64,000 nucleotides of DNA, taken from the IMG/VR virus record IMGVR_UViG_3300043446_004613, positions 124,001 through 188,000 of that record; one strand, 5' to 3'. The number at the start of each line of letters is the position of its first letter. Position 1 is the stretch's first letter. Shown here one piece after another: positions 19,855 through 63,753 of this stretch. Below the pieces are notes generated by a model. It saw nothing but the letters and a program-made list of their open reading frames with translations. It did no database searches and was not told the origin of the DNA. A program made the position numbers and the translations under genes.

Positions 19855-19886
19855 ACTCTTCAAAGAACAGGATGTAGTTAATCCGA

Positions 19887-20663
19887 ATGATACTCGCGCA
19901 CGCTATTGTTGACGTACTGCTCGAAGCCAGCCAACCGTCGGCTGGTGACGCAAAAGGTGTCTATGTTTTTGGTCGAGGATTACCGGCAAGTGGTTATCCA
20001 GCGCCCACCTTTGAAAAGCTTATTGAGCAATTTCGCGAATACGGTTTCATCGACGCAAACGTAAAAGACAGCGCTAATTTGATGAGCCAGCTGGTAAAGA
20101 CCGGGTACACTTTTATATTTAAGCGCAGCCAGAACGACATTGAAGTGATTGGACGTATTCCAGTTGAAACGTCTGCTGCGAAATACGTAGAGCAGTATCT
20201 CGGAATGGAAGATAAAACAGTCGTTCAGTATCGGCGCGATGTGTTTGCTACGCCTACAAAGATGAGCGCTGAAAAGATTTTCTCCAAAGAGGAATCTCAA
20301 GGGATGAAGCCCCTCAACAGTTCAACGCGGATTGGCATCGGCTACGAGACGGCAAAAGAAGGCATCAAAATCGTCGAAGTCCATCAGAACGGCCCAGCAG
20401 CGCAAGCTGGTCTTAAAGCGGGGATGATTCTGACTTACGCTTGGATTGATTTTGGTCAAGGTCATGGTTCTGACTGGTACAAGCTAACCTCTGAGGAAAG
20501 CCTTGCAGTAGTGCTAAGCGCAGCCCAGCCCGGAAAACCGTTGATGCTCAAAATTCTTGTTGGAGGTACCTACCAAAATTTTCCGGTAATCCCTGTCGCA
20601 AACCAGCAGGGAGGCCCACAGAAACCGCCAGCAGCCGGTTCAACCTCCGGTTCTAAACCTTGA
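19887..20663 (+). CDS. PDZ-domain protein, candidate internal head protein
   Basis: RIGIGY...IKIVEVHQNGPAAQAGLKAGMIL is a PDZ signature; N-terminal AHAIVDVLLE. Confidence 0.65.
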   Translation: MILAHAIVDVLLEASQPSAGDAKGVYVFGRGLPASGYPAPTFEKLIEQFREYGFIDANVKDSANLMSQLVKTGYTFIFKRSQNDIEVIGRIPVETSAAKYVEQYLGMEDKTVVQYRRDVFATPTKMSAEKIFSKEESQGMKPLNSSTRIGIGYETAKEGIKIVEVHQNGPAAQAGLKAGMILTYAWIDFGQGHGSDWYKLTSEESLAVVLSAAQPGKPLMLKILVGGTYQNFPVIPVANQQGGPQKPPAAGSTSGSKP

Positions 20664-20664
20664 T

Positions 20665-22095
20665 ATGCCTCTTTGGCTCGAAGAACGCCTGACGTTTGAT
20701 AAACTGTTTCGGATCAGCGATCCGAAGCGGGTCTATCGTTCTTTTACCGTACGCGGGCCGCCACTGGAGATCGACTCCTATCAGGATGTCGTCTATTACA
20801 TCTTCAATTTCAAGTCCAGCCCAAGCACAACCGGATTACGGCATCGCGGGTACGTCAAGTTTTTCAAACCGAAAAACAAGAGTCCCAAAAGCGTGCCGCT
20901 CCAGCATTTGGATTGCTTGGTTGATTGCACGTGTCCCGACTTCCGTTATCGCTGGGCATGGGCAAACAAGCAGCGCCAAAGCAGCGTTGTCGGCCCGAAC
21001 TCGCTTAATCAGGCGTGGAATAAAGCGCCGCGTAAAACGAATCCATCCGGTAAGCCGGGTCTGTGCAAGCACATCTTGGCGGCGCGGCAGTACATCTACG
21101 GTTTGATGTCCGCGTTCCCCGGTGATGAACCAGATACGGCATATAAGCTTGACCGTCTGACCAAATACGCGACCAAACGCTGGACTGATTTTGAAGGTCA
21201 GATGCAAGCAGCCAAGGAGCGTGAAAAAGAAATTCGCCGTCGGCGCGAACAGCGTAATCTTGGCCAGCTGCCACTGACACCACCACCGTTACCTGCTGCC
21301 TCAAAGGCTCCAGCGTCTACACCTGTACGGCCAGTGTCTACAGAACCGAGTGTCGATGCTGTGAAGTCAGCACCGCAGGCGCAAAAGCCCAAGGCGACCA
21401 CGGCGTTCAAAAGCGCATCACCGGAACCTTTGCCTACCGATGTTACCGCTAAAAAGCCTGCTACACCGCAGCAAAAACAAGTTTCCGTTAAACCAGCACT
21501 GACACCGACATCGAAGCCGAAACGTGTGATCGGAAACCGTATCGTGCAGCCGTATAATCCTAGTGACAAGTACTGGATCAAACCAGAGGAGGCACTGCTG
21601 TGTGTGCCGATACGCGATATTATTTTGGAGAGTGTAGTTAGTGCGAACGGTAAAAGTATGAGCAACATCAAAGAAGCCATCAAACTCGTCGAGGAACTGG
21701 AAGCTGACGAAATTCAGCTTGGTGACGAAATGCCTGCAACTGACATGGGCTTGGGTAGCGACATCGGCGGTGAAACGCTGGAACCGAGCGAACCTGCCGT
21801 CAGTGACAGCGCTATCGGTGCCGATACGGAAGGCGACACGGCGCTTAGCCTCCTCCGCTCCATCAAAACCTCTCTTGAACAGATTGCCGCCGCAGTCGCT
21901 CCTGTCGACGCTCTCCCTGCCCCCGGTGAAGCCGGTGAAGGCGTGGAAGGTGCCGAAGAAGCTCCGATGCCCGGCATGCCTCCCGCTGATCTCGGTGCCG
22001 AAGCCGCTGCCGAGGGTGAAACCCCGGAAGAGGAAGAAGCCGAGCACGAAGACGACGAAGCCGAAGCTGAAGCTGAAGGCGAAGAAAAAGAGTAA
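20665..22095 (+). CDS. SWIM zinc-finger protein with Pro/Lys linker and acidic tail
   Basis: VDCTCPDF...LCKHIL (CxC...CxH); possible internal start at 21658. Confidence 0.65.
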   Translation: MPLWLEERLTFDKLFRISDPKRVYRSFTVRGPPLEIDSYQDVVYYIFNFKSSPSTTGLRHRGYVKFFKPKNKSPKSVPLQHLDCLVDCTCPDFRYRWAWANKQRQSSVVGPNSLNQAWNKAPRKTNPSGKPGLCKHILAARQYIYGLMSAFPGDEPDTAYKLDRLTKYATKRWTDFEGQMQAAKEREKEIRRRREQRNLGQLPLTPPPLPAASKAPASTPVRPVSTEPSVDAVKSAPQAQKPKATTAFKSASPEPLPTDVTAKKPATPQQKQVSVKPALTPTSKPKRVIGNRIVQPYNPSDKYWIKPEEALLCVPIRDIILESVVSANGKSMSNIKEAIKLVEELEADEIQLGDEMPATDMGLGSDIGGETLEPSEPAVSDSAIGADTEGDTALSLLRSIKTSLEQIAAAVAPVDALPAPGEAGEGVEGAEEAPMPGMPPADLGAEAAAEGETPEEEEAEHEDDEAEAEAEGEEKE

Positions 22096-22113
22096 CCATT
22101 TACATTCGACACT

Positions 22114-22572
22114 ATGAACCCCGGTGAATATACAAGCCCGCTTGTTCGCAAGACGCTGGTTCAGTGTCCTGTTGTTTCCGGTTACGTGACTTCGCGCCTG
22201 TACACGCAGGACGATTATCCGCCGACCATTTCCGGCGGTACGACTGCGACGAACATGCTCGTGACGTTTGAGAACGTGGGTAACACCCAGTTCGCCGTTT
22301 ACTTGCGCGAAACCAACGACCGGAGCATCAGCGGCATCCGCTACAACCTGACCGATAATCCGGTCAATCTGGTACCCGGCGGTCAGCAGACCAAAATGCT
22401 CAGTGGCACCCGCAGCTTCCTTGAAGTGTATTGCTCTGGAACTACGGCTGGCCAGCTGCGTATGCAGATCGACTCGCAACGTCGTTGGAGTGAACTTGGG
22501 TTTGCGAAGGATGATCCGTTCTATCCGCCGCAGCTGTGGCAAGCCACGGTTCTTCCCGGCCCGATCACTTAA
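22114..22572 (+). CDS. putative virion beta-sandwich protein (paralog of 33345 and 50680 genes)
   Basis: shared hhhxNxGxN motif; biased codons. Confidence 0.55.
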   Translation: MNPGEYTSPLVRKTLVQCPVVSGYVTSRLYTQDDYPPTISGGTTATNMLVTFENVGNTQFAVYLRETNDRSISGIRYNLTDNPVNLVPGGQQTKMLSGTRSFLEVYCSGTTAGQLRMQIDSQRRWSELGFAKDDPFYPPQLWQATVLPGPIT

Positions 22573-24787: not shown

Positions 24788-25131
24788 TAATGGACGCGCT
24801 AAAGCGGACTATCGACCAGTCGATTAAGACACGACTGGCGAACCCAGCGCAACGTAAACAGGTTGTAGACACCGTGCTGGCAGGATTTGAGCATCTGCGT
24901 AAAAATCCAGTGCCCGATTTGCCCGAGCGCACGCAAAAACTACGCCAGCGCGTTGAAAAGCTGGCGCAGGAAGTAGCGGTAGAGTTTTCCGGTGATAAGC
25001 TCGTAGTTAAGGTGGCCGGGGCGTCAGAGTCGTTGTTGGTAGAGCTTAGACGCGGCACAAACTGGTATGCGCCGTGGGAAGAGATTGACGTGATTGTTCT
25101 GGCTGCGATATTAAAAGACCCAAGCAAGTAG
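24784..25131 (+). CDS. hypothetical (possible head-tail) protein
   Basis: 115 aa, ATGA coupled, ELRRGT motif. Confidence 0.5.
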   Translation: MIMDALKRTIDQSIKTRLANPAQRKQVVDTVLAGFEHLRKNPVPDLPERTQKLRQRVEKLAQEVAVEFSGDKLVVKVAGASESLLVELRRGTNWYAPWEEIDVIVLAAILKDPSK

Positions 25132-25140
25132 TTAAGTCAA

Positions 25141-25404
25141 ATGAAAGACCTCAAAAAGATCATTTCGGAATCCGTCGTGAACGGCGGCAAGAACTATGTG
25201 AGCGAAGCCGTGAACCAGATTCTCGGCGAAGACGTCTCTAGCGGCCAAACGGTCGCAGTTGTTGACGATCCGATCAGCGGTATGACCGGTGCCAAAGGCA
25301 AGGTCAAATCCATCAGCGACTCCAATCCCGGATTCGCGGACGTGGAGCTTGAAAACGGCACCACGGTGAAGATGCAGACTTCGCTGCTCGTTCCCGTCAA
25401 GTAA
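25141..25404 (+). CDS. small SH3/KOW-like protein, probably abundant
   Basis: GQTVAVV...GAKGKVKSI...ADVEL pattern; own upstream motif and terminator; biased codons. Confidence 0.55.
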   Translation: MKDLKKIISESVVNGGKNYVSEAVNQILGEDVSSGQTVAVVDDPISGMTGAKGKVKSISDSNPGFADVELENGTTVKMQTSLLVPVK

Positions 25405-25468: not shown

Positions 25469-25488
25469 ACAGACCCGTAATTAAGTGT

Positions 25489-26562
25489 GTGAACGTACCG
25501 AATTGGAAAGGTAACACGCTGAACACGCAGGCCGGTGCCTTGGCTGGCACCAGTATGCGTTATCATGAACTGGCGCTCCAACAGTGGCTGAACACAGTGT
25601 TCAAACTGCGCTGGGGCGTGCCGGTGCCTGTTGTATTCTCTACACCGATGGACGCGTTCAGCGCGTTCAACAAGCTCTGGGCCGAAAACGACAACGTGTT
25701 CAAATACCTGTTGGACGTAAAAGACGAGGAAGGCCGACCGGTGTATCAGCCGTATCCACAGCCGGTGCGCTACCCGATCATAAGTGTATACAGAAAAGGC
25801 TGGAAGCTGCGTCAGTCGCATAACTTCTCGATTCACCGGATGCGCTACATCAACTGGCCCACGGTCAGCAGCACCGGCTCAAGTGTATACGGGCGACCCG
25901 ATCAAGGTGATAACCTTACCCAGTGCAACATGGGTCACGTGACAACGAGCCGTTTTCCGATGGCTTTCGATTACCGTTTCCAGATCGATCATTTTTGTAA
26001 CCGCCCGGATACGCAGGCATTTTATATTTCGCAGCTGTTCCGCGAATTTTGGCGTACAGGAGGCCCGACGATGCAGACATGGATCGTCGTGAATTATCCC
26101 GGTTTAGGCTCAAAGCTTGTTCGACTTTATGTCGACGGTGAAATCCAGAACATGACGCCGGAAGAACCGGAAGATGGCAAGAGCGTTGAATTTCGCACCA
26201 GTTTCACCGTCGTGCTGGAAGGTTACGATATTGACCTCGATTATCAGATTTATCCGACGCTATGGAAACTGGTGCTGCGCAGCGGAAGCGTTGATCCGGC
26301 GGCACTGACTGACGCGTTTAACGCACTAACCATAGACATGCGCGAACAGCCGGATAATAGCGTCGTAAACTATCGCAGCAAGATGGGTGCGATGCCACCT
26401 GAAGGCGATTGCCCGCAAAAACTGCGTGACGCTCGCTTGGAGCGCGAGCAGGTACAGGTTACCGTGCTTGAAGCATTACAGGTTACAACGCAAGGGCCTT
26501 CCGGTTATCCGCCAGCAGCCGGAGTTACCGCTTTCGGTACTGCTTCACTAGCTTCAGTGTAA
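25489..26562 (+). CDS. tail terminator/completion protein (gp15-like)
   Basis: position before the sheath; PMAFDYRFQID and FRTSFTVVLEG segments resemble gp15-type folds. Confidence 0.55.
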   Translation: MNVPNWKGNTLNTQAGALAGTSMRYHELALQQWLNTVFKLRWGVPVPVVFSTPMDAFSAFNKLWAENDNVFKYLLDVKDEEGRPVYQPYPQPVRYPIISVYRKGWKLRQSHNFSIHRMRYINWPTVSSTGSSVYGRPDQGDNLTQCNMGHVTTSRFPMAFDYRFQIDHFCNRPDTQAFYISQLFREFWRTGGPTMQTWIVVNYPGLGSKLVRLYVDGEIQNMTPEEPEDGKSVEFRTSFTVVLEGYDIDLDYQIYPTLWKLVLRSGSVDPAALTDAFNALTIDMREQPDNSVVNYRSKMGAMPPEGDCPQKLRDARLEREQVQVTVLEALQVTTQGPSGYPPAAGVTAFGTASLASV

Positions 26563-26670
26563 ACACCCGCGAGTACGTGGCGTTGCGTTAAGTGCGCTGA
26601 ATGATACTGGTAGTTAAAAGTGTGAGCGCGGTTTTAATAGATTAGCGCGTAGTTAAGACAGCAAAAGATT

Positions 26671-31324: not shown

Positions 31325-31331
31325 GTTCTTA
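31325..31331 (+). promoter_or_regulatory. GTTCTTA upstream motif (one of 9 exact copies, see findings)
   Basis: ends 5 nt before ATG 31337. Confidence 0.55.
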
Positions 31332-32760: not shown

Positions 32761-33338
32761 AAACGATTATTCACGTCGGCTGCGGCCCGATCTACATGGA
32801 GTCTGATAGGAACTACCGCTGGATAAACATGGACATCAATCCAGCTTTTAAGGCGGATATTACAGGTGATTGTAGACAGCTTAGCGTTCTGATTGGGAAT
32901 AACGTCGGTGACTACTTGTGGTCGTGCCATCATCTGGAGCATCTGCCTTACCCGGACGGTGTCCAAGAGACATTGCGCCAGTTCCTAGCGGTGCTTAAAC
33001 CCGGAGGAATTGCGCGTATCGCCACACCTGACCTTGAAACAGTAGCGCAGGCTTACTGTGACGGCAGCAGCTTGAAGTTCATCTACGGCGAAGACTTCAA
33101 GGGCTACGCGCATATCGACTGTCCGGCGGAGCGGTTCTTGTTTTTCATGCGTGCGTGGGAACACACGTTTATCCCCGATTTCGTCCTTTTGTCTACACTT
33201 ATGCGTGAAGCAGGCTTTGAAAACGTCCGCCGTTGTACCGCAAATCAAAGCGCCATACCCGGCTGGTGCCATGACCGGTTTCAATCTGAGAGCCTATACA
33301 TTGAAGGACAGAAACCTGCGCAGACCGAGTGTATTTAG
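32757..33338 (+). CDS. class I SAM-dependent methyltransferase
   Basis: IHVGCG, NMDI, HHLEHL and LKPGGIARIATPD motifs. Confidence 0.82.
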   Translation: MKTIIHVGCGPIYMESDRNYRWINMDINPAFKADITGDCRQLSVLIGNNVGDYLWSCHHLEHLPYPDGVQETLRQFLAVLKPGGIARIATPDLETVAQAYCDGSSLKFIYGEDFKGYAHIDCPAERFLFFMRAWEHTFIPDFVLLSTLMREAGFENVRRCTANQSAIPGWCHDRFQSESLYIEGQKPAQTECI

Positions 33339-35452: not shown

Positions 35453-35472
35453 ACAAGGTAGAACGGCAAAAG

Positions 35473-37213: not shown

Positions 37214-37232
37214 TCTCTATTGTAGTTACAGC

Positions 37233-42336: not shown

Positions 42337-44057
42337 GCGACAACGGTAGAACGTTTCACCGCAAAGAACCGAATTTCCTCGCCGTTACCGGATGCCCATA
42401 CTTTTTCGATCTCTGCATCAATCTCTTCGGTCTTCATGACGCGGTTTTCGCGCTCTTGGATTAAACGGCGCAGTTCGTTTAAGTCGTAATCGCCTGTATG
42501 CGTGTACACACGGAGTACGTCAAAACCGAACTTCTCAAGCGTCGCTTTCAAAGTTGCCGGACTGTAGTGGACATAGTGCGTGTTGACGTCCAGCCATTGC
42601 CATTTTTCTTTGCGCTGTTCGCTACAATACGATTCGATGTTAGGAACGATACCGGCGAAAATGCCTCCTACTTTTAAGAGTTTGCACACACGGCTTAAAA
42701 CCTCAGCTGGCTTGGAAAGGTGCTCGAACGTGTGGATAGCGACAATCACGTCAAGGCTGTCGGCATCAATCGCACAATCCAGCAGTTCGTCGCAGGTGGT
42801 AGGTATGCCGAGCACAGAGTTGCTAAAATTGGCCGCCTTGTAGCAAACGTCGATACCCTGCGGCGTGAATCCCTTCTCGCGAGCATTTACCATGAAGGCA
42901 CCCCAGCCGCAGCCAATGTCCAGCATCTTACCGGGCGGTTTGGCGAATTCCATAAGCTGCTGCATGAAGTAGTCACGACGCAGTCCGCTCGTACGGATGT
43001 CGTCAAAATTCTTCGGCAGGCGCATGTGTGAGTGGTCATCGGCGTACTGCTGATAATAGAGCATCGTCTGCTCATGATCCGGGTGCGTGCGCAGATACAC
43101 GAGATTGCAGCTTGGGCACTTTACGATGTCAGTCTGCGCTCGATGCTGCGGAGCGTTGGCGGCATCTGCGTCGCAGATGGGACATTTTGTTAACACGGTA
43201 TTCATAGATTTTTTGTATAGTTTTGGTATATGAACAATAGCGCTTTCGCCGTAAATCGCGTTGCGCCGGTTGAAAATGCAGTTCGGGCCTTCGAGCCACA
43301 CTTCGAGCATGCTGTCGTGCTTCAAGCCTTCACAGATGGCGTAAGGCAGCGACTGGTTTCCAATGTACAAGCGGCAACCCGCTATGAGACGCGCAAGTTC
43401 AAGGAAGTCTTTTGTCGGCAAATACGTCAAATAACCCCAGTCAGCAACGAACGCGTTGTACTCGCTAGGCAATCCGACAAAGGCCGCTCTTTTGCCGTGA
43501 CGCTCCATGATCTTCGCCCACGGAAAATCAGAATTACGCCAACGCGGGCTGCGGTGGATAAGAACTGGATAGTCATTTAGCTCAGTGGGAGTGTCGATCG
43601 TAAGCCACGCGGATTGACAGGCATCTAGCGGCACTTTGAACGTGTATAGATGAGCTTCCGCTAGGTTGAGTCGCCGTGCGCCTTCCGCCATTTTGGTGTG
43701 CTCCGTCAGCAGGTATTCACGGAACTGGTTCAAGTCGATGTCGATTTCAGGGGCTTTTTCTACAAAGCTCAGTTCGTGGATATACGGTTGCATTTCCAGC
43801 AGAGGTCGCATTACTTCTACATGCTCTGCTGTCATCGACAAACGTGTCTTGTGTTGAACACTTGGGCCGATAAACAAGCTGCCGCCGCCCATCGCTTTTA
43901 TGGTCGGCAGCGCGTAAATGATGTCGCCAAAGTCACCGCTATGGAAAAACGAAAGACGGTGCTTCAGTGGAATGACGACGCTTCTTTCGGCAGACACGGG
44001 ATCAAAGTGTTCTGCTTTTAGCTTTTTAGCGATGTATTCAAACGATTTCACTAGCAA
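42333..44057 (-). CDS. fusion of a GT9-like glycosyltransferase and a Zn-binding class I methyltransferase
   Basis: HSGDFGDIIYALP and LIAGCRLYIGNQS (GT9-like); CPIC...CPSC, LDIGCGWG, HTFEH (methyltransferase). Confidence 0.75.
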   Translation of the reverse strand: MLVKSFEYIAKKLKAEHFDPVSAERSVVIPLKHRLSFFHSGDFGDIIYALPTIKAMGGGSLFIGPSVQHKTRLSMTAEHVEVMRPLLEMQPYIHELSFVEKAPEIDIDLNQFREYLLTEHTKMAEGARRLNLAEAHLYTFKVPLDACQSAWLTIDTPTELNDYPVLIHRSPRWRNSDFPWAKIMERHGKRAAFVGLPSEYNAFVADWGYLTYLPTKDFLELARLIAGCRLYIGNQSLPYAICEGLKHDSMLEVWLEGPNCIFNRRNAIYGESAIVHIPKLYKKSMNTVLTKCPICDADAANAPQHRAQTDIVKCPSCNLVYLRTHPDHEQTMLYYQQYADDHSHMRLPKNFDDIRTSGLRRDYFMQQLMEFAKPPGKMLDIGCGWGAFMVNAREKGFTPQGIDVCYKAANFSNSVLGIPTTCDELLDCAIDADSLDVIVAIHTFEHLSKPAEVLSRVCKLLKVGGIFAGIVPNIESYCSEQRKEKWQWLDVNTHYVHYSPATLKATLEKFGFDVLRVYTHTGDYDLNELRRLIQERENRVMKTEEIDAEIEKVWASGNGEEIRFFAVKRSTVVA

Positions 44058-44598: not shown

Positions 44599-44618
44599 AC
44601 GACAAAGAACGGTTTTTG

Positions 44619-44810: not shown

Positions 44811-44830
44811 AGTTCTAAGAACAAGATAGC

Positions 44831-45889
44831 ATGATCGGGCCGGTACTAAAGCAGGAAATTGAGAATACGTTCATCGTGGTGCGCGAAAAGTGTACCACCC
44901 TCGAATTGGTATTCTGCTGCCCCGAGTGCGGCGATAAGACAGGCCATCGCAGCGTAAACCTCAAGTCCGGCAAGACTTTCTGCTGGAAATGCAACAAGGG
45001 CAAGAATAACAAAGGGAACTTTGTTGCGTGGGCGCGGGCGCTCGGTTTCCATTTTACGGCAGATACAGGGGCGAATAACGTTCCGGTTGAACAACTGCTT
45101 TATGCTGAAGATCAGCAGGAATCGGTTGTTCCCGTTATCCAAGAGGTGAAGCTGCCTGAAGGTTTTACACCAATCGCCCGGACACCCAAGAGCGTATACA
45201 CTAAGTTGATAACCAAGATGGCTGCACGTAAAAACCTAGACTACGCTGCATTTGCTGAAGCAGGAGCCGGTTATACCCCAGCCCACCCAAAATGGGAGCC
45301 TTTCTGCATTTTTCCGGTGCAAGAGTACGGTTTGACGGTCTACTACCAAGGGCGCACTTATGTAGACGTGCCGGGGGAGACAACCAAGAAATTTCCAAGT
45401 CGGAACGAGGTAACTTTTGGTGCTGGTAACTGGGTGTACAACATCGATACCGTTCGTGAGCAACAGCCGGAAATTGTTGTCATCGTGGAATCCATATTGA
45501 ACGTGCTGTCGTTGCGCAAAAAGCTTCGGCAGCTTGGCTGGAAAAATATCGTTCCTGTCTGTGTTTTTAAGCACCACCTAAGCCAAGTACAAGCACTTAA
45601 ACTACTGCGTTGCCAAGGTGTTCAAGAGTTCTGCATGCTGTTTGACCACGATGCGATCGATAAAACGTGGCAGAGTGTCAGCGCGATTGCGAACAAGAAG
45701 GTCGTGACGATCGCTGAGATGCCGTTATTAGACGGCAATAAGAAATGCGATCCAAACGACGATGTGGACGCCGCGATAAACGCAATCGAAAATCGTCAGC
45801 TGTATACAGCTTCGAGCTTCAGCCGTAAAATGCTGGAGGCAGATGATCCGAGAATTTTTAGTATCACATCACGAAATATCTGTTCTTAG
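44831..45889 (+). CDS. DNA primase (zinc finger plus Toprim)
   Basis: CPECGD...CWKC zinc finger, VIVESILN and LFDHDA (DxD) Toprim motifs. Confidence 0.8.
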   Translation: MIGPVLKQEIENTFIVVREKCTTLELVFCCPECGDKTGHRSVNLKSGKTFCWKCNKGKNNKGNFVAWARALGFHFTADTGANNVPVEQLLYAEDQQESVVPVIQEVKLPEGFTPIARTPKSVYTKLITKMAARKNLDYAAFAEAGAGYTPAHPKWEPFCIFPVQEYGLTVYYQGRTYVDVPGETTKKFPSRNEVTFGAGNWVYNIDTVREQQPEIVVIVESILNVLSLRKKLRQLGWKNIVPVCVFKHHLSQVQALKLLRCQGVQEFCMLFDHDAIDKTWQSVSAIANKKVVTIAEMPLLDGNKKCDPNDDVDAAINAIENRQLYTASSFSRKMLEADDPRIFSITSRNICS

Positions 45890-46551: not shown

Positions 46552-46758
46552 ATGGTTTGGGGAAAGACGTCCTTGCGGATGTCGAAAGCGCAGTTTCGTA
46601 GGCAGTGCCCTGAGTGCGGTCGGCGCGAAATTTGGGTACCGGCGCGGGGAGCCGCGAAAGGTTACTGGTCAGTTGTTGATCTTCACAATCTCGAACAGCG
46701 AAGCCCAGAATGGCTTGCTTCGCATTTGATGTCTTGGATAACAGGCGACCGTAGTTAA
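46552..46758 (+). CDS. small hypothetical protein
   Basis: 68 aa with CPECG. Confidence 0.35.
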   Translation: MVWGKTSLRMSKAQFRRQCPECGRREIWVPARGAAKGYWSVVDLHNLEQRSPEWLASHLMSWITGDRS

Positions 46759-50618: not shown

Positions 50619-50631
50619 ACAGGCTAAGAAC

Positions 50632-50656: not shown

Positions 50657-50679
50657 CGTGATCTACGCAGACGGCTCGA

Positions 50680-51207: not shown

Positions 51208-51335
51208 AGTGATGTTTTGGTTTGTTGTTGTTGTTGTTTATCAGCCAGCCACATGACCGGCATTTGTTGCACCATAACAACGTGTTCACTGCCTACTGCA
51301 TCGAACACTGTTGAAATTCAATGCGCTTAGACGTA

Positions 51336-52358: not shown

Positions 52359-52439
52359 GCTTTTTAAGAACAGCGTCTGCTTGAAGTTCAATCAGGAAAG
52401 ATGCGTTAAGGGGTTTGCTGTTATTGGTTCTTATTGAAA

Positions 52440-52661
52440 GTGGAACTTACATTGATGACAAAGCTATATTCACTGGCTGTAAACAGACAGGAAGTCTGTC
52501 GGGTCGAAATTGAAGCCCCGGCATGGCTGCCGGTAACGCCGCGTGTACCGAAAGAATGGCTGCGCGGAGTCGTCACCAAGGCGCTTCACCGCTATTTTTC
52601 TGAGTCGTCCCTGTATTTAGATTGTCATGACCGAAGCACGCGCAGCACAATTTTTAATTGA
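52440..52661 (+). CDS. small hypothetical protein
   Basis: GTG 6 nt after GTTCTTA. Confidence 0.4.
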   Translation: MELTLMTKLYSLAVNRQEVCRVEIEAPAWLPVTPRVPKEWLRGVVTKALHRYFSESSLYLDCHDRSTRSTIFN

Positions 52662-53004
52662 AGACCTGCCCTTTAAGCTCAAGAAAGCAGGGGCAGACGA
52701 GAAAGTCTCAGCCGTAGCCAACCGGATGGCTTTGCAGGTCTTTAGTGTCCCTTCGTTGCAGGCTTTTCTTTCTGACTGGAGCGTCACCGATAAAGGCTGT
52801 TCTGACGGTGCCGTGAAAGTTCAGCTGGACTTTTTGCGTTTGCCGCAGGAAATCATCCCCGAGCTTGAGAAATTACTGTGCGTTGACCAGTTCAAGAACC
52901 ACCGGCTGCTAAAATACATCAAGAACGGTCAAGCGCGTACAGGGCTGGAGATTGAGATCAGCCCGAAAGACCTGCCGGGTACGCCTTACAACTATGCCTT
53001 CTGA
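52627..53004 (+). CDS. hypothetical protein
   Basis: 125 aa, RAAQFLIE start. Confidence 0.55.
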   Translation: MTEARAAQFLIEDLPFKLKKAGADEKVSAVANRMALQVFSVPSLQAFLSDWSVTDKGCSDGAVKVQLDFLRLPQEIIPELEKLLCVDQFKNHRLLKYIKNGQARTGLEIEISPKDLPGTPYNYAF

Positions 53005-53302
53005 TGAAGCCAAGAAAGTGGCAGGCACCTACGTTCCCGATGAAGTGAACAAGCTGTCAGAAACGATGGCTTGGCTTACCAAGGAATGTCGTTCTGGCTC
53101 TCTTTCTGAGCACGTAGCTCAATTCTGCAACGAGCAGCGTGAGTTTATAGACAAATCGCTGGTGATCGTTGAAAACGTCACCAGCGACTGTATACACTGT
53201 AGAATTCCCTGCCGCTGCTACGACCACGAAGATGCAGGCACTTTTCCGGTCGATGTCCGCTTCACGCTTAATCCGAAGACGGGGGCGTGTGCTCGGATTT
53301 AA
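52994..53302 (+). CDS. hypothetical protein
   Basis: 102 aa with a Cys cluster. Confidence 0.45.
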   Translation: MPSDEAKKVAGTYVPDEVNKLSETMAWLTKECRSGSLSEHVAQFCNEQREFIDKSLVIVENVTSDCIHCRIPCRCYDHEDAGTFPVDVRFTLNPKTGACARI

Positions 53303-53559
53303 CCGATCTTTTCGTGGTCAACCAGACGATCTGCCGGATTTTTGTATACAAGGCGGCCATCAATGAAGTCATTGACCACCTTACGGGCCTGTTGATTCAG
53401 TGAATTCACGCCGGTAGCTTCGCCGCGCTCGAAGATTTCGGAAAGCTTGCCGTGCTTGTCGCCGCTGAGGCGGAAGCTGACAACGTGTGGATGTGTGATC
53501 GCCTCGCGTTGAACGGCGGCGCTTTTCTTTGTTTTTGGTGCTTTAGTGTTTTTAGCCAT
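53299..53559 (-). CDS. putative ribbon-helix-helix DNA-binding protein
   Basis: HVVSFRLS...KLSEI...SLNQQARKVV pattern; GTTCTTA upstream. Confidence 0.5.
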   Translation of the reverse strand: MAKNTKAPKTKKSAAVQREAITHPHVVSFRLSGDKHGKLSEIFERGEATGVNSLNQQARKVVNDFIDGRLVYKNPADRLVDHEKIG

Positions 53560-53611
53560 ACCTCTAAGAACAGCATTTTGAGAATTTTCTGTTCTCGTAG
53601 TTAAAGATATT

Positions 53612-60645: not shown

Positions 60646-61104
60646 TTATTCGCGTGGCGGCTCAGGCAAAGCAATCTCTTCTTCGCCAGCACCTTCAGGT
60701 GAAGCCAGTTGTTCGGCTGTTTCTGCCTCGCTGGGTTCTTCGCCGGGTTCAGGCAGACCAGCTTCTGGGCCGCCTTCGACCGGAGCTTCCATGCTCTCAG
60801 GCTCTTGTGTCGGCACCTCTTGCGCGTCTTCTGGCGCACCGGCATCTGGCGGCGCATTAGGCGGGAGCGGGATAGCCATATCGCTTTCCGCATCACCTTC
60901 GCCCTCACCTTCACCCTTGCCTTCATCCTCCTCTTCGCCGGGGCCGGGCACGCGTTCCATGTACCACTGCCATTCCGCGTTGAGTTCGTCGGCAACAGGA
61001 TCACTGTGGTTATTGGCCAGCGCTGCTGCGATCGCCTCGATTTGACCCCAGCTAAGTTCTAACTTATAATCGTTATAAGTTTTTTTAATCTTTTCGAGTT
61101 TCAT
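60646..61104 (-). CDS. acidic Glu/Pro-rich hypothetical protein
   Basis: 152 aa with a low-complexity C-terminal half. Confidence 0.6.
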   Translation of the reverse strand: MKLEKIKKTYNDYKLELSWGQIEAIAAALANNHSDPVADELNAEWQWYMERVPGPGEEEDEGKGEGEGEGDAESDMAIPLPPNAPPDAGAPEDAQEVPTQEPESMEAPVEGGPEAGLPEPGEEPSEAETAEQLASPEGAGEEEIALPEPPRE

Positions 61105-61290
61105 GGTTTTGCTTTATTTTTGTGTAAACGCGGACGCACCAGTCGTAAAACTCGGCCAAGCTGTTATCGCTTTTAGCATAGTTGCATACTTTACAGCAGG
61201 GAACTGCGTTTTCAGGAACGTACGCCATATCATTATCTACACGATCAAGATCGCTATAGTTAAAGCCGCCGTTTATTCCGTAGCCGTGTA
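61085..61290 (-). pseudogene. remnant of an HNH endonuclease gene
   Basis: frame reads DLDRVDNDMAYVPENAVPCCKVCNYAKS...EFYDWC, the C-terminal half of phage HNH nucleases; no N-terminal part. Confidence 0.6.
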
Positions 61291-61326
61291 TAAGAACAGA
61301 ATCGGCGGCTTGCTGTTCTTAACACC

Positions 61327-62463
61327 ATGAATCTGATCACATTCAATGACCCGATCACAATCGCCTTCAAGAAAAGCGCCGGTGGCGTCACTCAAACCTT
61401 TGAAGCCAACCGTCCATACCTGATCGCCAATGCGCAGATTGAGCGCATCATGCGCGATCAACAAGTCAGCGGACGCGCTTACAAAATCAGCCGCGCCGAC
61501 ACACGTATTCCGAACGCGCATAAAGCCGCTTTCAACCGTAATGACAGCGTTCTGATCTACAACGGCAGCGGCGGCTACGGCGACCAGATTTTGACTTGGC
61601 CGGTGGCGCGTTATCTTGCCAATCAGGGTTTGAAAGTCCACGTCTTAACTGACCCCGGCAACAACGTATGCTGGTGGGGATTTGACTTCGTCAAGACGGT
61701 GAACACGATTCCGTTGCTTTGGGAGACTGTTCAGCTATATGACCACTTCATCCACTGGGAGGCGGTGGTTAACATGGACGAGCATCAGGATCAGGAGCAT
61801 CCGATTGACATGATGTTCCGCAAGATAGGCTACGATCCGGCGGATATTTCGGCTGAGGACAAGTGCGTGCGCCCTGTGTTTACGCCAAGTGAACTAGGCA
61901 CCTTGAACAAATACGTGACTTCCGGCAAGCGCGTCGGTCTTTACCAGCTATCCAGTGCCAATCCAGTGCGCTGCCTGCCTGCGGCGGACAGCGTGTTCTT
62001 GATCATGAAGATTGCTGAAGCCTATCCTGACATTCACTGGCTCTGCCTGCATGACGAGTTTGTGCCCAAGGAGTACAAAGAGACACTGGCTGTTGAAATT
62101 ACCAAGCGCGGTTTTACGAATGTGGAAGGTTTTACGGCTCCTAATCTGCGCGAACTGTGGGCGCTGACAGAGCACGTGAATGTGGTTATCAGCCCTGACA
62201 GCATGATGGCCCACATCGCCGGAGCTTTCGGTACTCCCTGCGTAGGTCTTTGGGGGCCGATGTCACCGGAAAGTCGGATGAAATACTACAAGAACCACCA
62301 CCCGATCTACCATCGCGAGTTCTGCCCGCACAGCCCCTGCTTTGTATACAGTAACACATTCCCGAAATATTGTCCGCCTCGCGCAAATCGCAATGTCTGC
62401 GACGTTATGGCCGGTATTTCGCCTTCGGAAGTGATTAGCGCTATCGGTCACATCTGTAGATAG
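61327..62463 (+). CDS. glycosyltransferase family 9 (heptosyltransferase-like)
   Basis: GGYGDQILTWP and VISPDSMMAHIAGAFGTPCVGLWGP signature. Confidence 0.85.
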   Translation: MNLITFNDPITIAFKKSAGGVTQTFEANRPYLIANAQIERIMRDQQVSGRAYKISRADTRIPNAHKAAFNRNDSVLIYNGSGGYGDQILTWPVARYLANQGLKVHVLTDPGNNVCWWGFDFVKTVNTIPLLWETVQLYDHFIHWEAVVNMDEHQDQEHPIDMMFRKIGYDPADISAEDKCVRPVFTPSELGTLNKYVTSGKRVGLYQLSSANPVRCLPAADSVFLIMKIAEAYPDIHWLCLHDEFVPKEYKETLAVEITKRGFTNVEGFTAPNLRELWALTEHVNVVISPDSMMAHIAGAFGTPCVGLWGPMSPESRMKYYKNHHPIYHREFCPHSPCFVYSNTFPKYCPPRANRNVCDVMAGISPSEVISAIGHICR

Positions 62464-62597
62464 TTCATGAACGATGAACCGATAAATACTGAGTATATTG
62501 ATCCCGAGGCTGAACGCTATCGGTCACATCTGTAGATAGTTCATGAACGATGAACCGTTAAATCCTGAGCATCTTGATCCCGAAGCTGAACGCTATC
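62439..62597 (+). repeat. 76-bp tandem duplication bounded by CGCTATC
   Basis: CGCTATC at 62439, 62515 and 62591; first 43 nt identical, 5 substitutions in the remainder. Confidence 0.92.
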
Positions 62598-63271
62598 TCA
62601 GCCAGCTTCCGCCCGCGCCGCCAGACGATACGCTTCAAGGTGTCGTTTCCGCGCTGCAACCGTTGGGCATTACAGAGCTTAAGGTGCAATATTCCGGCTA
62701 TGGTGACAGTGGAGACATCGACTACATCAGCATAGAGCCGTCTGACATCGTTTTGCCGGATAAGTTCGATGAAGTGGTTAAAGACGTTGCGTGGAAAACA
62801 GCCTACAATCTACACTCCGGATTTGAGAATAACGAAGGTGGTCAAGGTCATGTAACTTTTGATTTTAACGATAGAACGGTCACGGTATATCACACAGACA
62901 ATGTTGAGTTCGACGAGGAACTGAACATGCCGAATTTACCTTTGCCGGAAGAATTTCGGGAATACACTGGGGATGACGGATCGTGCTACATTAGCTTCTA
63001 CATGGGCAGCGATGGTGATGTCTACTTCAATGATAAAACTGAAGGCATCGATGAAGATGCAAACAATGTTGGGGCTATTTCAACGCTTGTTTTTGATAAC
63101 GCAGACTTAGGGGAAAATGATTCCTACTCTGGAGCAGTGCGCTGGCAAAATGGCTCAGACACCTGCTCTATCAGAGGCACGAAATCATGGACAGCGACTG
63201 ACGAGGATAATGCCTCTGTAAACACGTATACGTTCGATGAAATTTTAGCGAATGAGCAGCTAGGTACCTAA
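62543..63271 (+). CDS. acidic DUF6878-like protein
   Basis: LGITELKVQYSGYGDSG and GFENNEGGQG motifs. Confidence 0.6.
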   Translation: MNDEPLNPEHLDPEAERYLSQLPPAPPDDTLQGVVSALQPLGITELKVQYSGYGDSGDIDYISIEPSDIVLPDKFDEVVKDVAWKTAYNLHSGFENNEGGQGHVTFDFNDRTVTVYHTDNVEFDEELNMPNLPLPEEFREYTGDDGSCYISFYMGSDGDVYFNDKTEGIDEDANNVGAISTLVFDNADLGENDSYSGAVRWQNGSDTCSIRGTKSWTATDEDNASVNTYTFDEILANEQLGT

Positions 63272-63291
63272 CCGGAGGAGTTACCTTAAAC

Positions 63292-63681
63292 ATGGCCACA
63301 TCTTACCACCACGCAGTGAGCAGCGCCCGTAAGTGGGGCGGTAAACCGGATGATTACATCAAGGTTCACACGTGGTTTGATGAATCGAAGATGTTCATGG
63401 CCGATTTCCGGCACCGCGCATTGCGTCACCATGCTGAAGGTATCTTCATGGCTGAACGCTTGTTCGGTACAGTCATCATCAATTCCTTGGGTCGGGAGAT
63501 ACCTGTGCGTTGGATCGGAGAGCAGCATGTGCTTGAAGACCTTGGGTTTATCCCTTCCATGCAAGATTGGTTTGAGCACATCACCCCGGTTCATTGGATG
63601 CGGAACACCAAAAAGCTTCCCGTTGAGATTGAAGCAGAGAAAGCGGCCAAAGCAGCTGCAAAAGCACGTAGTGCGAAGTAA
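63292..63681 (+). CDS. DUF6915-like protein
   Basis: HHAVSSARKWGG, WFDESK, RHRALRHHAEG and EQHVLED motifs. Confidence 0.7.
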   Translation: MATSYHHAVSSARKWGGKPDDYIKVHTWFDESKMFMADFRHRALRHHAEGIFMAERLFGTVIINSLGREIPVRWIGEQHVLEDLGFIPSMQDWFEHITPVHWMRNTKKLPVEIEAEKAAKAAAKARSAK

Positions 63682-63753
63682 TTGTTGATTATTGTTGACG
63701 GTTACTATACCGTCGAGGTGCGACGTTTTTCTGGTTCTTAACGTCGGCCCGCT

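What the first reader, a model, noticed from the sequence alone, without database searches (positions are those of the whole stretch)
19862..63740. Second upstream motif, GTTCTTA, marks replication and glycan-modification genes
Exact copies: + strand 31325, 45882, 52427, 61315, 63734; - strand 44816-22, 50625-31, 52365-71, 53565-71. Eight of nine end 5-6 nt before the start codon. Variants: GTTCTTT before SbcC (19862-68) and the GT cluster (44604-10), GTTCTAA (20650), GTTCTAC (35458-64). Targets include SbcC, SbcD, GroES, the helicase, GT9 and the methyltransferase cassette. Together with GTAGTTA this gives GT-NN-TTA with a 2-nt code that tracks gene class; opposite classes sit back to back at 19862-19880 and 53565-53603. 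Inference: a middle/late promoter pair, read by two sigma factors or one factor with different affinity.
Basis: partly seen in the sequence, partly recalled or inferred. Interest (0 to 1): 0.72.

Follow-up and report, generated by a model that had tools for sequence, protein, structure and literature searches.

The report
Phage replication-gene promoter motif GTTCTTA
GTTCTTA is a real, conserved signal lying 5-8 bases before the start codons of DNA-replication, repair and sugar/methyl-modification genes in an uncultivated 211-kb T4-like phage. It is most likely the core of a phage-specific promoter class whose messenger RNAs have almost no leader.

Summary
The window has 11 exact GTTCTTA copies. 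That count is not unusual (5.9 expected), but the placement is: 8 copies end 5-6 nt before a gene start (P ~ 6e-22). In an unbiased test of all 7-mers across the 211-kb genome, GTAGTTA ranks first and GTTCTTA third for sitting just before ATG.

Both motifs reappear as top hits in related phage contigs and two complete relatives. Homologous genes keep their motif class in 22 of 22 cases.

- **Class B (GTTCTT[A/T] and variants):** SbcC, SbcD, DNA polymerase, helicases, primase, GroES-like protein, glycosyltransferases.
- **Class A (GTAnTTA):** portal, sheath, baseplate, adaptor.

The genome shows no Shine-Dalgarno signal. A third class of canonical sigma-70-type promoters also places the ATG where transcription should start. 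The motifs can lie further from the ATG, in tandem, or directly after terminators.

I read GTTCTTA as a -10-like promoter core giving leaderless or near-leaderless mRNAs. The phage encodes one conserved sigma-family protein. No transcript 5' ends were available, so timing, start sites and the reading factor remain inferred. The "two-letter code" idea is too simple.

The parts
19862..19868 (-). Class B variant GTTCTTT, 7 nt before the ATG of the SbcC-like gene (17905-19854)
   Evidence: SbcC-like by phrog_77, E 1.8e-35
20650..20656 (+). Class B variant GTTCTAA, 8 nt before the ATG of the 476-aa gene 20665-22095
31325..31331 (+). Class B GTTCTTA, 5 nt before the ATG of the 220-aa methyltransferase-like gene 31337-31999; a second copy, GTTCTAA, lies at 31314
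   Evidence: weak Methyltransf_24 hit
35458..35464 (-). Class B variant GTTCTAC, 5 nt before the ATG of gene 34688-35452; this gene has a weak baseplate-hub hit and may be a class exception
42346..42352 (-). Class B variant GTTCTAC, 9 nt before the GTG of the 292-aa gene 41458-42336
44604..44610 (-). Class B variant GTTCTTT, 5 nt before the GTG of the 186-aa gene 44038-44598, which heads the methyltransferase cluster
44812..44822 (.). Palindromic GTTCTAAGAAC. On the - strand it reads GTTCTTA, 5 nt before the 63-aa gene 44619-44810. On the + strand it reads GTTCTAA, 12 nt before the primase-like gene 44831-45889
   Evidence: primase by phrog_47, E 1.2e-24
45882..45888 (+). Class B GTTCTTA overlapping the stop codon of the primase-like gene, 5 nt before the GroES-like gene 45894-46520
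   Evidence: Cpn10; class B in most orthologs compared
50625..50631 (-). Class B GTTCTTA, 6 nt before the 190-aa gene 50046-50618; it abuts the T-run of the best terminator-like hairpin in the region (50636-50657)
   Evidence: the same terminator-motif junction is present in relatives L018 and L019
52365..52371 (-). Class B GTTCTTA, 6 nt before the SbcD-like gene 51336-52358
   Evidence: phrog_100, E 1.5e-36; class B in most orthologs
52427..52433 (+). Class B GTTCTTA before a small ORF; the start is either GTG at 52440 or the called ATG at 52455
   Evidence: the start assignment is ambiguous
53565..53571 (-). Class B GTTCTTA, 5 nt before the 86-aa gene 53299-53559; back to back with the portal gene's class A site
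61291..61297 (-). Relatives have a B-A tandem before that gene's ortholog
61315..61321 (+). Class B GTTCTTA, 5 nt before the GT9 glycosyltransferase gene 61327-62463
63734..63740 (+). Class B GTTCTTA, 13 nt before the DEAD-box helicase gene (63754 onward); it follows a terminator-like hairpin at 63711-63725
43559..43565 (-).
977..983 (+). Class A GTAGTTA, 4 nt before the GTG of gene 988-1635; its TAG is the stop codon of the upstream gene
7265..7271 (+). Class A GTAGTTA, 4 nt before gene 7276-7518
8928..8934 (+). Class A GTAGTTA, 4 nt before the 72-aa gene starting at 8939
11436..11442 (+). Class A GTAGTTA, 7 nt before gene 11450-11680
13871..13877 (+). Class A GTAGTTA, 9 nt before gene 13887-14294
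14677..14683 (+). Class A GTAGTTA, 16 nt before the 782-aa gene 14700-17048; it overlaps the -35 hexamer of the divergent sigma-70-type promoter
19874..19880 (+). Class A GTAGTTA, 6 nt before gene 19887-20663; back to back with the SbcC class B site
25128..25134 (+). Class A GTAGTTA, 6 nt before gene 25141-25404
25477..25483 (+). Class A variant GTAATTA, 5 nt before gene 25489-26562
26610..26655 (+). Two class A GTAGTTA copies (26610 and 26649) before the tail-sheath gene 26671-28968, at 54 and 15 nt
33331..33337 (+). Class A variant GTATTTA, 7 nt before gene 33345-33698
37222..37228 (+). Class A GTAGTTA, 4 nt before gene 37233-38066
46751..46757 (+). Class A GTAGTTA, 4 nt before the GTG of the 1102-aa gene 46762-50070
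52613..52619 (+). Class A variant GTATTTA, 7 nt before gene 52627-53004; its orthologs carry either GTATTTA or GTAGTTA
53597..53603 (+). Class A GTAGTTA, 8 nt before the portal gene 53612-55585; a class-B-like CTGTTCTC lies directly before it
   Evidence: conserved in relatives down to about 50% portal identity
56695..56701 (+). Class A GTAGTTA, 7 nt before the tail-fibre-like gene 56709-58043
6845..6890 (+). Sigma-70-type (probably early) promoter: an A/T-rich block plus TTGACT at 6857. The ATG of gene 6891 lies 34 nt after the first base of the -35 hexamer, so the mRNA would be leaderless
   Evidence: it follows the strong terminator after the MCP gene
14654..14700 (-). Sigma-70-type promoter with TTGACT at 14688-14683. 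The ATG of gene 14291-14653 lies 35 nt after the first base of the -35 hexamer

Best explanation
GTTCTTA, more fully (C/T)(C/T)GTTCT(T/A)(A/T/C) with an A/T-rich stretch just upstream, is the -10-like core of a phage-specific promoter class. This class drives the replication, recombination and DNA- or sugar-modification genes of an uncultivated 211-kb T4-like jumbo phage whose host is probably a member of Verrucomicrobiota.

GTAnTTA, mostly GTAGTTA, is the matching core for virion-structure (late) genes. A third class looks like ordinary host sigma-70 promoters (-35 TTGACT / TTTACA plus a -10).

In all three classes the -10-type element sits so close to the start codon that transcription should begin at or within a few bases of the A or G of the start codon. 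The mode is 4 nt for class A, 5 nt for class B and 6 nt after the canonical -10 hexamer. Promoter-proximal genes would therefore be expressed from leaderless or near-leaderless mRNAs, in a system that uses no Shine-Dalgarno pairing.

The host RNA polymerase is presumably redirected by phage factors. One conserved full-length sigma-70-family protein (336 aa) is encoded inside a class-B-headed operon, which fits a cascade from class B to sigma to class A.

Shown: motif reality, placement, class-function link, conservation, absence of SD, and the presence of a sigma-family gene. Inferred: promoter function, transcription start position, timing, and which factor reads which motif.
For: - **Placement.** GTAGTTA ranks first and GTTCTTA third of all 7-mers for preceding ATG. 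The window placement has P ~ 6.5e-22.
- **Independent rediscovery.** Both motifs come out on top in relatives and in the complete genomes G002 and G003.
- **Class is conserved.** Orthologs keep their class. Genome-wide, 22 homolog pairs agree and none disagree.
- **Class tracks function.** Class B covers SbcC, SbcD, DNA polymerase, DnaB-like and other helicases, primase, RusA, an endonuclease VII-like protein, GroES-like protein, GT9, other glycosyltransferases and a methyltransferase. Class A covers portal, sheath, baseplate wedge, head-tail adaptor and a tail-fibre-like protein.
- **No SD enrichment.** SD-like 4-mers occur before 17% and 5% of genes, against 12% background. Loci from the probable host group are equally SD-poor.
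- **Heads of transcription units.** A motif sits at 57% of unit heads against 26% of internal genes. Divergent pairs have start codons only 14-34 nt apart, with one outward-facing motif each.
- **Spacing is not just compaction.** The motif stays 4-9 nt from the start even when the intergenic gap is 150-1000 nt.
- **Variable distance in relatives.** The same gene can carry GTAGTTA at 17-26 nt, with a B motif further upstream in tandem. The sheath gene has sites at 15 and 54 nt. This rules out a fixed-spacing ribosome site.
- **Terminators directly before B motifs.** Seen at 50636-50657 and 63711-63725, and conserved in relatives.
- **Canonical promoters share the geometry.** G002 has 22 copies of a sigma-70-type promoter; the start codon (13 ATG, 1 GTG) lies 6 nt after the -10 in 14 of them. 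The own genome has 8-10 TTGACT/TTTACT-type promoter candidates, and in the five with a clear start the ATG lies 34-37 nt after the start of the -35.
- **Extended class A consensus is anchored to the motif, not to the ATG.** Position +4 is C or T in all minimal-spacing sites and C in 58% of longer-spacing sites. Position +5 is a purine.
- **GTG starts occur only at minimal spacing.** For class A the counts are 26/71 at 4 nt, 5/22 at 5 nt and 0/55 at 6 nt or more (p 5.6e-6). Class B shows the same trend (p 0.03). This is expected if the first base of the codon is the initiating purine.
- **B sites are single and directional, not palindromic**.
- **A sigma-family gene is present.** The top 50 listed PDB fold matches are all sigma-factor entries, nearly all sigma-70 family. 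It has 293 homologs (the 120 listed are 56-76% identical) on contigs up to 245 kb, it is present in G002-G004, and it lies in a class-B operon.
- **Other systems not detected.** No RegA, MotA, AsiA or phage RNA polymerase was found.
Against: - There is no direct evidence for transcript 5' ends or timing. The only RNA run holds fragments of distant relatives and says nothing about start sites.
- Spacing varies from 4 to 9 nt, occasionally 12-16 nt, so many transcripts would carry 1-10 nt leaders, and how these are translated is unknown.
- Neither motif has the A(-11) and T(-7) pattern of known sigma-70-family -10 elements.
- For class B, the base at the predicted start in longer-spacing sites is not purine-rich.
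- The motifs are not clearly avoided inside genes. GTAGTTA antisense is 1 against a median of 7 (5th percentile). GTTCTTA is 5 against 11, which is not significant.
- Only one sigma-family gene was found for two phage-specific classes.
- The most abundant late gene, MCP, has no proximal motif.
- About 60% of genes have neither motif, so promoter assignment for them is open.
- Sigma fold matches are uniform but weak (best E 0.01).
Confidence: 0.65

Rival explanations
1. The motifs act on the RNA as class-specific translation signals. They could be a non-Shine-Dalgarno ribosome-recruitment element, or an operator for a translational regulator of replication genes, as RegA is in T4. In this reading transcription starts elsewhere.
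For: The motifs lie at -12 to -5 relative to the start codon, where a ribosome-binding site would be, with a lower spacing bound of 4-5 nt. Many sit inside co-directional gene runs and overlap the upstream stop codon. The genome has no SD, so some other initiation signal must exist.
Against: - The two motifs cannot pair with one rRNA site, because positions 3-4 are AG in one and TC in the other.
- About 60% of genes, including MCP, have neither motif and must still be translated.
- In relatives the same gene has the motif 17-26 nt away, or in B-A tandems more than 40 nt from the ATG.
- Divergent genes 14-34 nt apart would need their promoters buried inside each other's coding regions.
- B motifs abut terminators.
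- Canonical sigma-70 promoters occupy the same position.
- No RegA homolog was found.
- The restriction of GTG starts to minimal spacing is not predicted by this model.
Confidence: 0.12
2. The motifs are binding sites for phage transcription activators or repressors (operators) rather than the element read by a sigma factor. The real core promoter would be something else nearby, such as the A/T-rich tract upstream of class B sites.
For: Several helix-turn-helix proteins are encoded. Some B sites form inverted pairs at divergent genes, for example 44812-22 and 61291-61321. An A/T-rich stretch precedes class B sites.
Against: An inverted partner is present at only 1 of 22 internal B sites, which equals the 4% background. 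The paired cases all serve two divergent genes. No other conserved element lies within 50 nt upstream of either class. The tight tether to the start codon holds even in long intergenic regions, which fits a start-site-defining element better than an operator.
Confidence: 0.12
3. The motifs are RNA-processing sites. A phage or host endoribonuclease would cut polycistronic transcripts just upstream of start codons and produce leaderless cistrons in a class-specific way.
For: Many sites are operon-internal and lie 4-9 nt before the start codon. A processing precedent adjacent to start codons is T4 RegB, which is my background knowledge and was not tested here.
Against: The motifs also head divergent units and follow terminators, where no upstream transcript would exist. 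Both classes are conserved as DNA in both orientations at back-to-back pairs. No nuclease candidate was linked to them. This model does not explain the parallel geometry of the canonical promoters.
Confidence: 0.06
4. This is chance or a compositional artefact: GTTCTTA is simply a common word near gene boundaries.
For: The copy number in the window is not above shuffle expectation. A few GTTCTTT copies may only be the T-run of a terminator.
Against: The placement statistics, the rediscovery in relatives and the 22 of 22 class concordance among homologs all argue against chance.
Confidence: 0.01

Closest known systems
T4-type late promoters (TATAAATA, read by gp55 with gp33 and the gp45 clamp)
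   Same: A short -10-only element with no -35, placed in front of virion-structure genes of a phage with T4-like portal, capsid, protease and sheath genes. A phage-encoded sigma-family protein is present. This parallel applies to the partner motif GTAGTTA.
   Different: The sequence is unrelated to TATAAATA. The sigma candidate is a 336-aa protein aligning with full-length sigma factors, not a 185-aa gp55; its gp55 profile hit is marginal (E 8e-5 to 3e-3). The element abuts the start codon and leaves no room for the SD-containing leader that T4 late mRNAs have.
T4 middle promoters (MotA box at -30 plus a sigma-70 -10, with MotA and AsiA)
   Same: A separate promoter class for replication and recombination genes, expressed before the late genes. 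This is the functional analogy for GTTCTTA.
   Different: GTTCTTA sits at about -12 to -6, not -30. No sigma-70-like -10 accompanies it. No MotA or AsiA homolog was detected.
Leaderless middle/late transcripts of Thermus phage phiYS40, and the '-10 motif adjacent to ORFs' pattern of Deinococcus-Thermus
   Same: A -10-type element directly upstream of the start codon gives mRNAs without a leader, and this is used by a large myovirus for most middle and late genes (review PMC3594737; PMC12340547).
   Different: In those systems the motif is the host-type TANNNT read by the host primary sigma. Here two non-canonical phage-specific cores partition genes by function, the likely host phylum is different (Verrucomicrobiota), and nothing has been tested experimentally.
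Shine-Dalgarno ribosome-binding sites
   Same: The position relative to the start codon, roughly -12 to -5.
   Different: There is no complementarity to the anti-SD. There are two mutually incompatible sequences. SD words are not enriched anywhere in the genome.

Membership tests
Bacterial/phage sigma-dependent promoter (-10-type element) | Primary transcripts start about 5-8 nt downstream of the element | not testable with these tools
   No usable RNA data. The geometry is compatible: modal gaps of 4-5 nt place the motif at about -12 to -5 if the start codon is +1.
Bacterial/phage sigma-dependent promoter (-10-type element) | Directional, found at the heads of transcription units, including after terminators and at divergent gene pairs | tested here: met
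   57% of unit heads against 26% of internal genes. Terminator-motif junctions. Single directional sites.
Bacterial/phage sigma-dependent promoter (-10-type element) | Functions at variable distance from the coding start | tested here: met
   Orthologs of gene 60646-61104 carry GTAGTTA at 4 to 26 nt, with B-A tandems. The sheath gene has sites at 15 and 54 nt, and the helicase at 13 nt.
Bacterial/phage sigma-dependent promoter (-10-type element) | A cognate sigma or specificity factor is encoded or available | tested here: inconclusive
   One conserved sigma-70-family protein was found. Its target motif is unknown and no second sigma was found. The protein-DNA complex job was not folded.
T4 late promoter / gp55 system | TATAAATA consensus | tested here: not met
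   The consensus is GTAnTTA for class A and GTTCTTA for class B.
T4 late promoter / gp55 system | gp55-type small sigma | tested here: inconclusive
   phrog_234 matches residues 60-154 of a 336-aa protein at E 8e-5 and 3e-3. The same profile also hits 8 of the 14 control genomes. The fold resembles full-length sigma factors.
T4 middle promoter / MotA-AsiA system | MotA box centred near -30 plus a sigma-70 -10, with MotA and AsiA proteins | tested here: not met
   The motif abuts the start codon and nothing is conserved 20-50 nt upstream. PF09114 and PF09010 are absent.
Shine-Dalgarno ribosome-binding site | Purine-rich GGAGG-like word complementary to the 16S 3' end, 5-10 nt before the start | tested here: not met
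   SD 4-mers occur at background frequency. The motifs are T-rich and not complementary to the anti-SD.
RegA-type translational operator | A RegA repressor is encoded and the operator overlaps start codons of replication genes | tested here: not met
   PF01818 was not detected in the genome. The position and gene class would fit, but see the distance and terminator arguments.
Leaderless-gene promoter architecture (Deinococcus-Thermus / phiYS40 type) | A -10 element within about 10 nt of the start codon and no SD | tested here: met
   The canonical TANNNT sequence itself appears only in the third (sigma-70-type) class, not in classes A or B.

The most novel reading that the evidence does not exclude
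A whole clade of roughly 210-245-kb T4-like phages, probably infecting Verrucomicrobiota, expresses essentially all promoter-proximal genes from leaderless mRNAs through three promoter classes. Two of these are non-canonical 7-9-bp cores (GTTCTTA for replication and modification genes, GTAnTTA for virion genes) that lack the A(-11)/T(-7) signature of known sigma-70-family -10 elements. They would be read by a new full-length phage sigma and at least one further unknown factor. Start-codon choice (GTG allowed only at minimal spacing) would be coupled to the choice of initiating nucleotide.
Probability: 0.4. Interest if true: 0.72.

Novelty: new variant of a known kind. Interest (0 to 1): 0.58.

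Why it matters
Temporal promoter classes are the backbone of phage gene regulation, but they have been worked out for only a few cultivated phages. This case offers a sequence-level, testable regulatory map for an uncultivated jumbo-phage clade from fresh water and soil.

- The map has three promoter classes, each tied to a gene function.
- All three appear to give leaderless mRNAs, in a host group (probably Verrucomicrobiota) that does not use Shine-Dalgarno pairing.

Practical uses follow.
- The motifs fix start codons and operon heads in these genomes.
- They allow unknown genes to be assigned to a replication or a virion class.
- They nominate a new sigma-promoter pair for biochemical study.

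Tried and rejected
- **Nucleotide search against known phages.** A megablast of 5.2 kb found nothing. The MCP protein is under 30% identical to anything in the phage collection, so no annotated relative could be used.
- **RNA evidence.** The two holders found with kind 'any' are the metagenome's own DNA runs. The single RNA run, a soil metatranscriptome, holds only 80-90%-similar fragments of the protease and MCP genes of relatives. No 5'-end pile-ups were seen, so it is uninformative.
- **Sigma-DNA complex prediction.** The job was not folded by the tool and provides no evidence.
- **Y(-1) test.** I tested whether a pyrimidine at -1 distinguishes motif-bearing genes. It does not: 86% against 74% in motif-free genes.
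- **Intragenic avoidance test.** Comparison with anagram k-mers gave only a weak antisense depletion, so it is not decisive.
- **Literature search for GTAGTTA as a promoter.** Only irrelevant primer hits.
- **Searches for other systems.** RegA, MotA, AsiA, T7-type RNA polymerase, and the Rpb1 and Rpb2 multisubunit RNA polymerase domains were all negative. Very divergent homologs could be missed. The T7-type model hit nothing in the control genomes either, so that negative is uninformative.
- **Motif test on probable host loci.** The loci are one repeated orthologous region, so enriched words reflect conserved coding sequence. The only usable result is that GTAGTTA and GTTCTTA are not start-proximal there.
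- **My first greedy ORF set** contained spurious genes. I replaced it with a codon-usage-scored set that largely matches the database gene calls in the part of the window compared, although it misses a few small genes.
- **Bacteroidota as host.** I considered this because of the missing SD. I rejected it in favour of Verrucomicrobiota on the epimerase evidence and because the third promoter class is TTGACA/TATAAT-like.

Full report
**What the window is.** The window is bases 124,001-188,000 of a single 211,113-bp contig with 52.4% G+C. The contig comes from a freshwater metagenome. It encodes a T4-type portal, prohead protease, gp23-type capsid protein and tail sheath. The capsid protein is under 30% identical to anything in the phage collection, and a nucleotide search found nothing. 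This is therefore an uncultivated, deep-branching T4-like jumbo phage. CheckV estimates 93% completeness.

**The observation.** GTTCTTA occurs 11 times in the window. All nine listed copies are correct. Two were missed: 43559-65(-), which is intragenic, and 61291-97(-), which is intergenic.

The number of copies is unremarkable: shuffles give 5.9 +/- 2.4, and 6 of 100 shuffles reach 11. The position is not. Eight copies end 5-6 nt before a gene start and a ninth ends 13 nt before one. Given 76 gene starts, that has a probability of about 6.5e-22.

I then asked, for every 7-mer in the 211-kb genome, how often it is followed by ATG at a gap of 3-9 nt. GTAGTTA came first (30/47, p ~ 4e-19). GTTCTTA came third (15/32, p ~ 1e-7), behind only GTAGTTA's own one-base shift (TAGTTAA). 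Related words followed: TGTTCTT, GTATTTA, CTGTTCT and GTTCTTT. No Shine-Dalgarno-like word appears near the top.

**Two motif classes.** When the start must open an ORF of at least 45 codons, the counts are as follows.

| Word | Start-proximal / total |
|---|---|
| GTAGTTA | 38 / 47 |
| GTATTTA | 10 / 15 |
| GTAATTA | 5 / 6 |
| GTACTTA | 4 / 7 |
| GTTCTTA | 17 / 32 |
| GTTCTTT | 12 / 33 |

Other GT-NN-TT(A/T) words show much lower fractions. Profiles anchored on the motifs show these features.
- **Class A:** GTAGTTA followed by a-(a/g)-g-C, with nothing conserved upstream.
- **Class B:** an a-A-t-(t/C)-(C/t) prefix before GTTCTT(A/T), and again nothing in a -35 position.

Ortholog comparisons add ATAGTTA to class A, and GTTCTAA, GTTCTAT and GTTCTAC to class B. 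The two classes are therefore constrained at different positions.

**Class tracks function.**
- **Class B genes:** SbcC-like, SbcD-like, primase, RusA-like resolvase and an endonuclease VII-like protein. Also DNA polymerase, a DnaB-like helicase, a second DNA helicase, a glycosyltransferase and an endolysin-like protein. Also Cpn10/GroES, GT9 and a DEAD helicase, and a methyltransferase-like protein.
- **Class A genes:** portal and sheath, a tail-fibre-like protein, baseplate wedge and head-tail adaptor, and a 2,127-aa protein with a C-terminal hydrolase domain. Many large proteins without matches also fall here, as is usual for structural proteins of novel phages.
- **Possible exceptions:** a radical-SAM protein in class A and a weak baseplate-hub hit behind a GTTCTAC variant.

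**Conservation.** A portal-based scan of IMG/VR gave 21 loci with 50-100% portal identity and 43-62% G+C. The same unbiased k-mer test places GTAGTTA first or near the top, and usually GTTCTTA among the leading words, in most identity groups down to about 59% portal identity.

Two relatives were read in full.
- **G002** (222.7 kb): GTAGTTA 23/27 (p ~ 3e-24) and GTTCTTA 9/20.
- **G003** (225 kb, with terminal repeats): GTAATTA 6/7, GTATTTA 6/8 and GTTCTTA 7/15.

Orthologs keep their class. Most orthologs of GroES, the SbcD-like gene, the 86-aa gene and GT9 are B. Most orthologs of portal, the 444-aa gene, the 125-aa gene and the 1,102-aa gene are A. Genome-wide, among homolog pairs where both members carry a motif, 22 agree and none disagree.

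**Promoter or ribosome site.** Several lines favour a DNA-level promoter.

1. The genome has no SD signal. SD 4-mers precede 17% of motif-free genes and 5% of motif-bearing genes, against 12% in random sequence. Some 60% of genes, including the capsid gene with its C/A-rich leader, have neither motif. The motifs are therefore not the general translation signal.

2. Using a codon-usage-scored gene set of 274 genes that largely matches the database calls, a motif precedes 57% of genes that head a strand switch and 26% of internal genes. Many divergent pairs have only 14-34 nt between their start codons, with one outward-facing motif each. That leaves no other room for promoters.

3. The short spacing is not just compaction. 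With intergenic gaps of 150-1,000 nt the motif still lies 4-9 nt from the start.

4. Distance is nevertheless flexible in a way a ribosome site is not. Orthologs of gene 60646-61104 carry GTAGTTA anywhere from 4 to 26 nt upstream, with a B motif 22-25 nt further up in tandem. The sheath gene has copies at 15 and 54 nt, and the helicase at 13 nt.

5. B motifs abut terminators. The best terminator-like hairpin of the region (50636-50657) runs straight into GTTCTTA, and a second hairpin (63711-63725) precedes the helicase site. The first junction is conserved in relatives.

6. B sites are single and directional. An inverted partner lies within 45 nt at only 1 of 22 internal sites, which equals background. 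This argues against a dimeric operator.

**A third, canonical class with the same geometry.** G002 contains 22 copies of an unmistakable sigma-70-type promoter: an A/T-rich block, then TTTACA, a 16-17-nt spacer and TATAGT. In 14 copies the start codon (13 ATG, 1 GTG) follows the -10 hexamer by exactly 6 nt. That is the position where transcription normally starts.

The present genome has 8-10 comparable promoter candidates with TTGACT or TTTACT as the -35. In the five with a clear start, the ATG lies 34-37 nt after the first base of the -35. Two are in the window: 6857(+) before gene 6891, directly after the capsid terminator, and 14688(-) before gene 14291-14653.

So in this clade even ordinary promoters are placed to give leaderless mRNAs. 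Classes A and B occupy the equivalent position: the motif spans about -11 to -5 or -12 to -6 when the start codon is +1.

**Two further details fit a start site fixed relative to the motif.**
- The extension after GTAGTTA is anchored to the motif, not to the ATG. Position +4 is C or T in all minimal-spacing sites and C in 58% of longer-spacing sites. Position +5 is a purine.
- GTG start codons occur almost only at minimal spacing. For class A the counts are 26/71 at 4 nt, 5/22 at 5 nt and 0/55 at 6 nt or more (Fisher p 5.6e-6). For class B they are 9/32 at 5 nt against 5/57 at longer spacings (p 0.03). This is expected if the first base of the codon is the initiating purine.

**Who reads the motifs.** A 336-aa protein (genome 114,960-115,970, minus strand) gives a marginal match to the gp55 late-sigma profile over residues 60-154. 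It also matches a Mor/late-activator helix-turn-helix over residues 238-314.

- It has 293 homologs; the 120 listed are 56-76% identical, on contigs up to 245 kb.
- It was modelled at mean pLDDT 79.
- The top 50 listed PDB fold matches are all sigma-factor entries, nearly all of the sigma-70 family, over almost its full length, though at weak E-values (best 0.01).
- It is present in G002, G003 and G004.
- It lies in a minus-strand operon headed by class B sites. This fits a cascade in which class B expression supplies the factor for class A, but that is an inference.

Three small helix-turn-helix proteins are further candidates. No MotA, AsiA, RegA or phage RNA polymerase domain was detected. 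The T7-type model hit nothing in the control genomes either, so that negative says little. A sigma-DNA complex prediction was not executed by the tool.

**Host context.** The phage epimerase gene (window 10167-11114, minus strand) is 66-94% identical to genes of many Verrucomicrobiota MAGs: Limisphaerales, subdivision 3 and Pedosphaera. Even the end of the upstream gene is similar, which suggests a recent transfer from the host lineage. The orthologous host genes have A/T-rich, SD-free upstream regions. SD words precede 5% of long ORFs in these loci, against 6% background. A host that does not rely on SD pairing makes a leaderless strategy plausible. The host assignment is still an inference.

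**What is known.** Leaderless middle and late transcripts are documented for Thermus phage phiYS40 (review PMC3594737). A -10 motif adjacent to ORFs has been validated experimentally as the promoter of leaderless genes in Deinococcus-Thermus (PMC12340547). T4 supplies the model of separate middle and late promoter classes, which is my background knowledge.

The present case has the same logic with new parts: two non-canonical cores, a different and longer sigma, a third host-type class, and a different probable host phylum.

**Limits.** No transcript 5' ends or timing data could be obtained. Promoter function, start position and the early/middle/late labels are therefore inferred from sequence, placement, comparative data and gene function. 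Translation-level, operator and RNA-processing readings are less likely but not excluded.

Noticed in passing
genome 99,969-100,045 and 100,235-100,652 (outside the window; locus L042 969-1045 and 1235-1652): The phage encodes a tRNA-Met (CAT) and a full-length tmRNA (Rfam RF00023, 127.5 bits, E 7e-51), side by side in a 1-kb stretch with no protein-coding gene.
   Followed up: partly
whole genome (e.g. window 14663, 23896, 45802, 53190): The 8-bp palindrome TGTATACA occurs 40 times in 211 kb, against about 2.6 expected from base composition. GTATAC occurs 106 times against 46 expected. Of the 40 copies, 31 are inside genes. It is often extended to CTGTATACAG. I have no explanation; it could be a modification, recognition or recombination site.
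   Followed up: partly
window 10167-11376 (- strand): The epimerase gene is 66-94% identical to genes of Verrucomicrobiota MAGs (Limisphaerales / subdivision 3). The 3' end of the upstream gene is also similar. This is a likely recent host-derived gene pair and the best host clue.
   Followed up: partly
window 5150-5215, 6702-6729 and 51208-51335: The capsid gene and the most conserved gene of the region (175 aa, 50680-51207, about 90% identical in relatives) have no A or B motif. Instead they have C/A-rich leaders. A strong terminator follows the capsid gene.
   Followed up: partly
window 3466-3483: The prohead-protease gene (3484-5178) has one of the very few SD-like words (GGGAGA) a few nt before its ATG, in a genome that otherwise lacks them.
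   Followed up: no
window 61107-61290 (- strand): Between the orphan GTTCTTA (61291-97) and gene 60646-61104 lies an open frame that, by eye, resembles the C-terminal part of an HNH endonuclease and has no obvious start codon. It may be a decayed homing-endonuclease insertion that split a B-A tandem promoter seen in relatives. No family search was run on it.
   Followed up: no
relative G002 (loci L060-L071), 22 sites, e.g. 14,310, 79,421 and 208,579: A roughly 45-bp, almost invariant sigma-70-type promoter cassette is repeated 22 times: 21 copies on one strand and one on the other. Each is followed by a start codon 6-9 nt after the -10. It amounts to a dispersed promoter repeat.
   Followed up: partly
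genome 195,486-201,869 (locus L044 486-6869): A 2,127-aa class A gene whose C-terminal 400 residues match hydrolase/phosphodiesterase families (phrog_13624, E 1.6e-57). It may be a virion-associated enzyme.
   Followed up: no
window 61042-61070 (+): The best canonical promoter match of the region (TTGACC, 17-nt spacer, TATAAT; 11 of 12 matches) lies before a weakly supported 75-aa ORF (61103-61330). It would give a leader of about 26 nt, unlike the other promoters.
   Followed up: no
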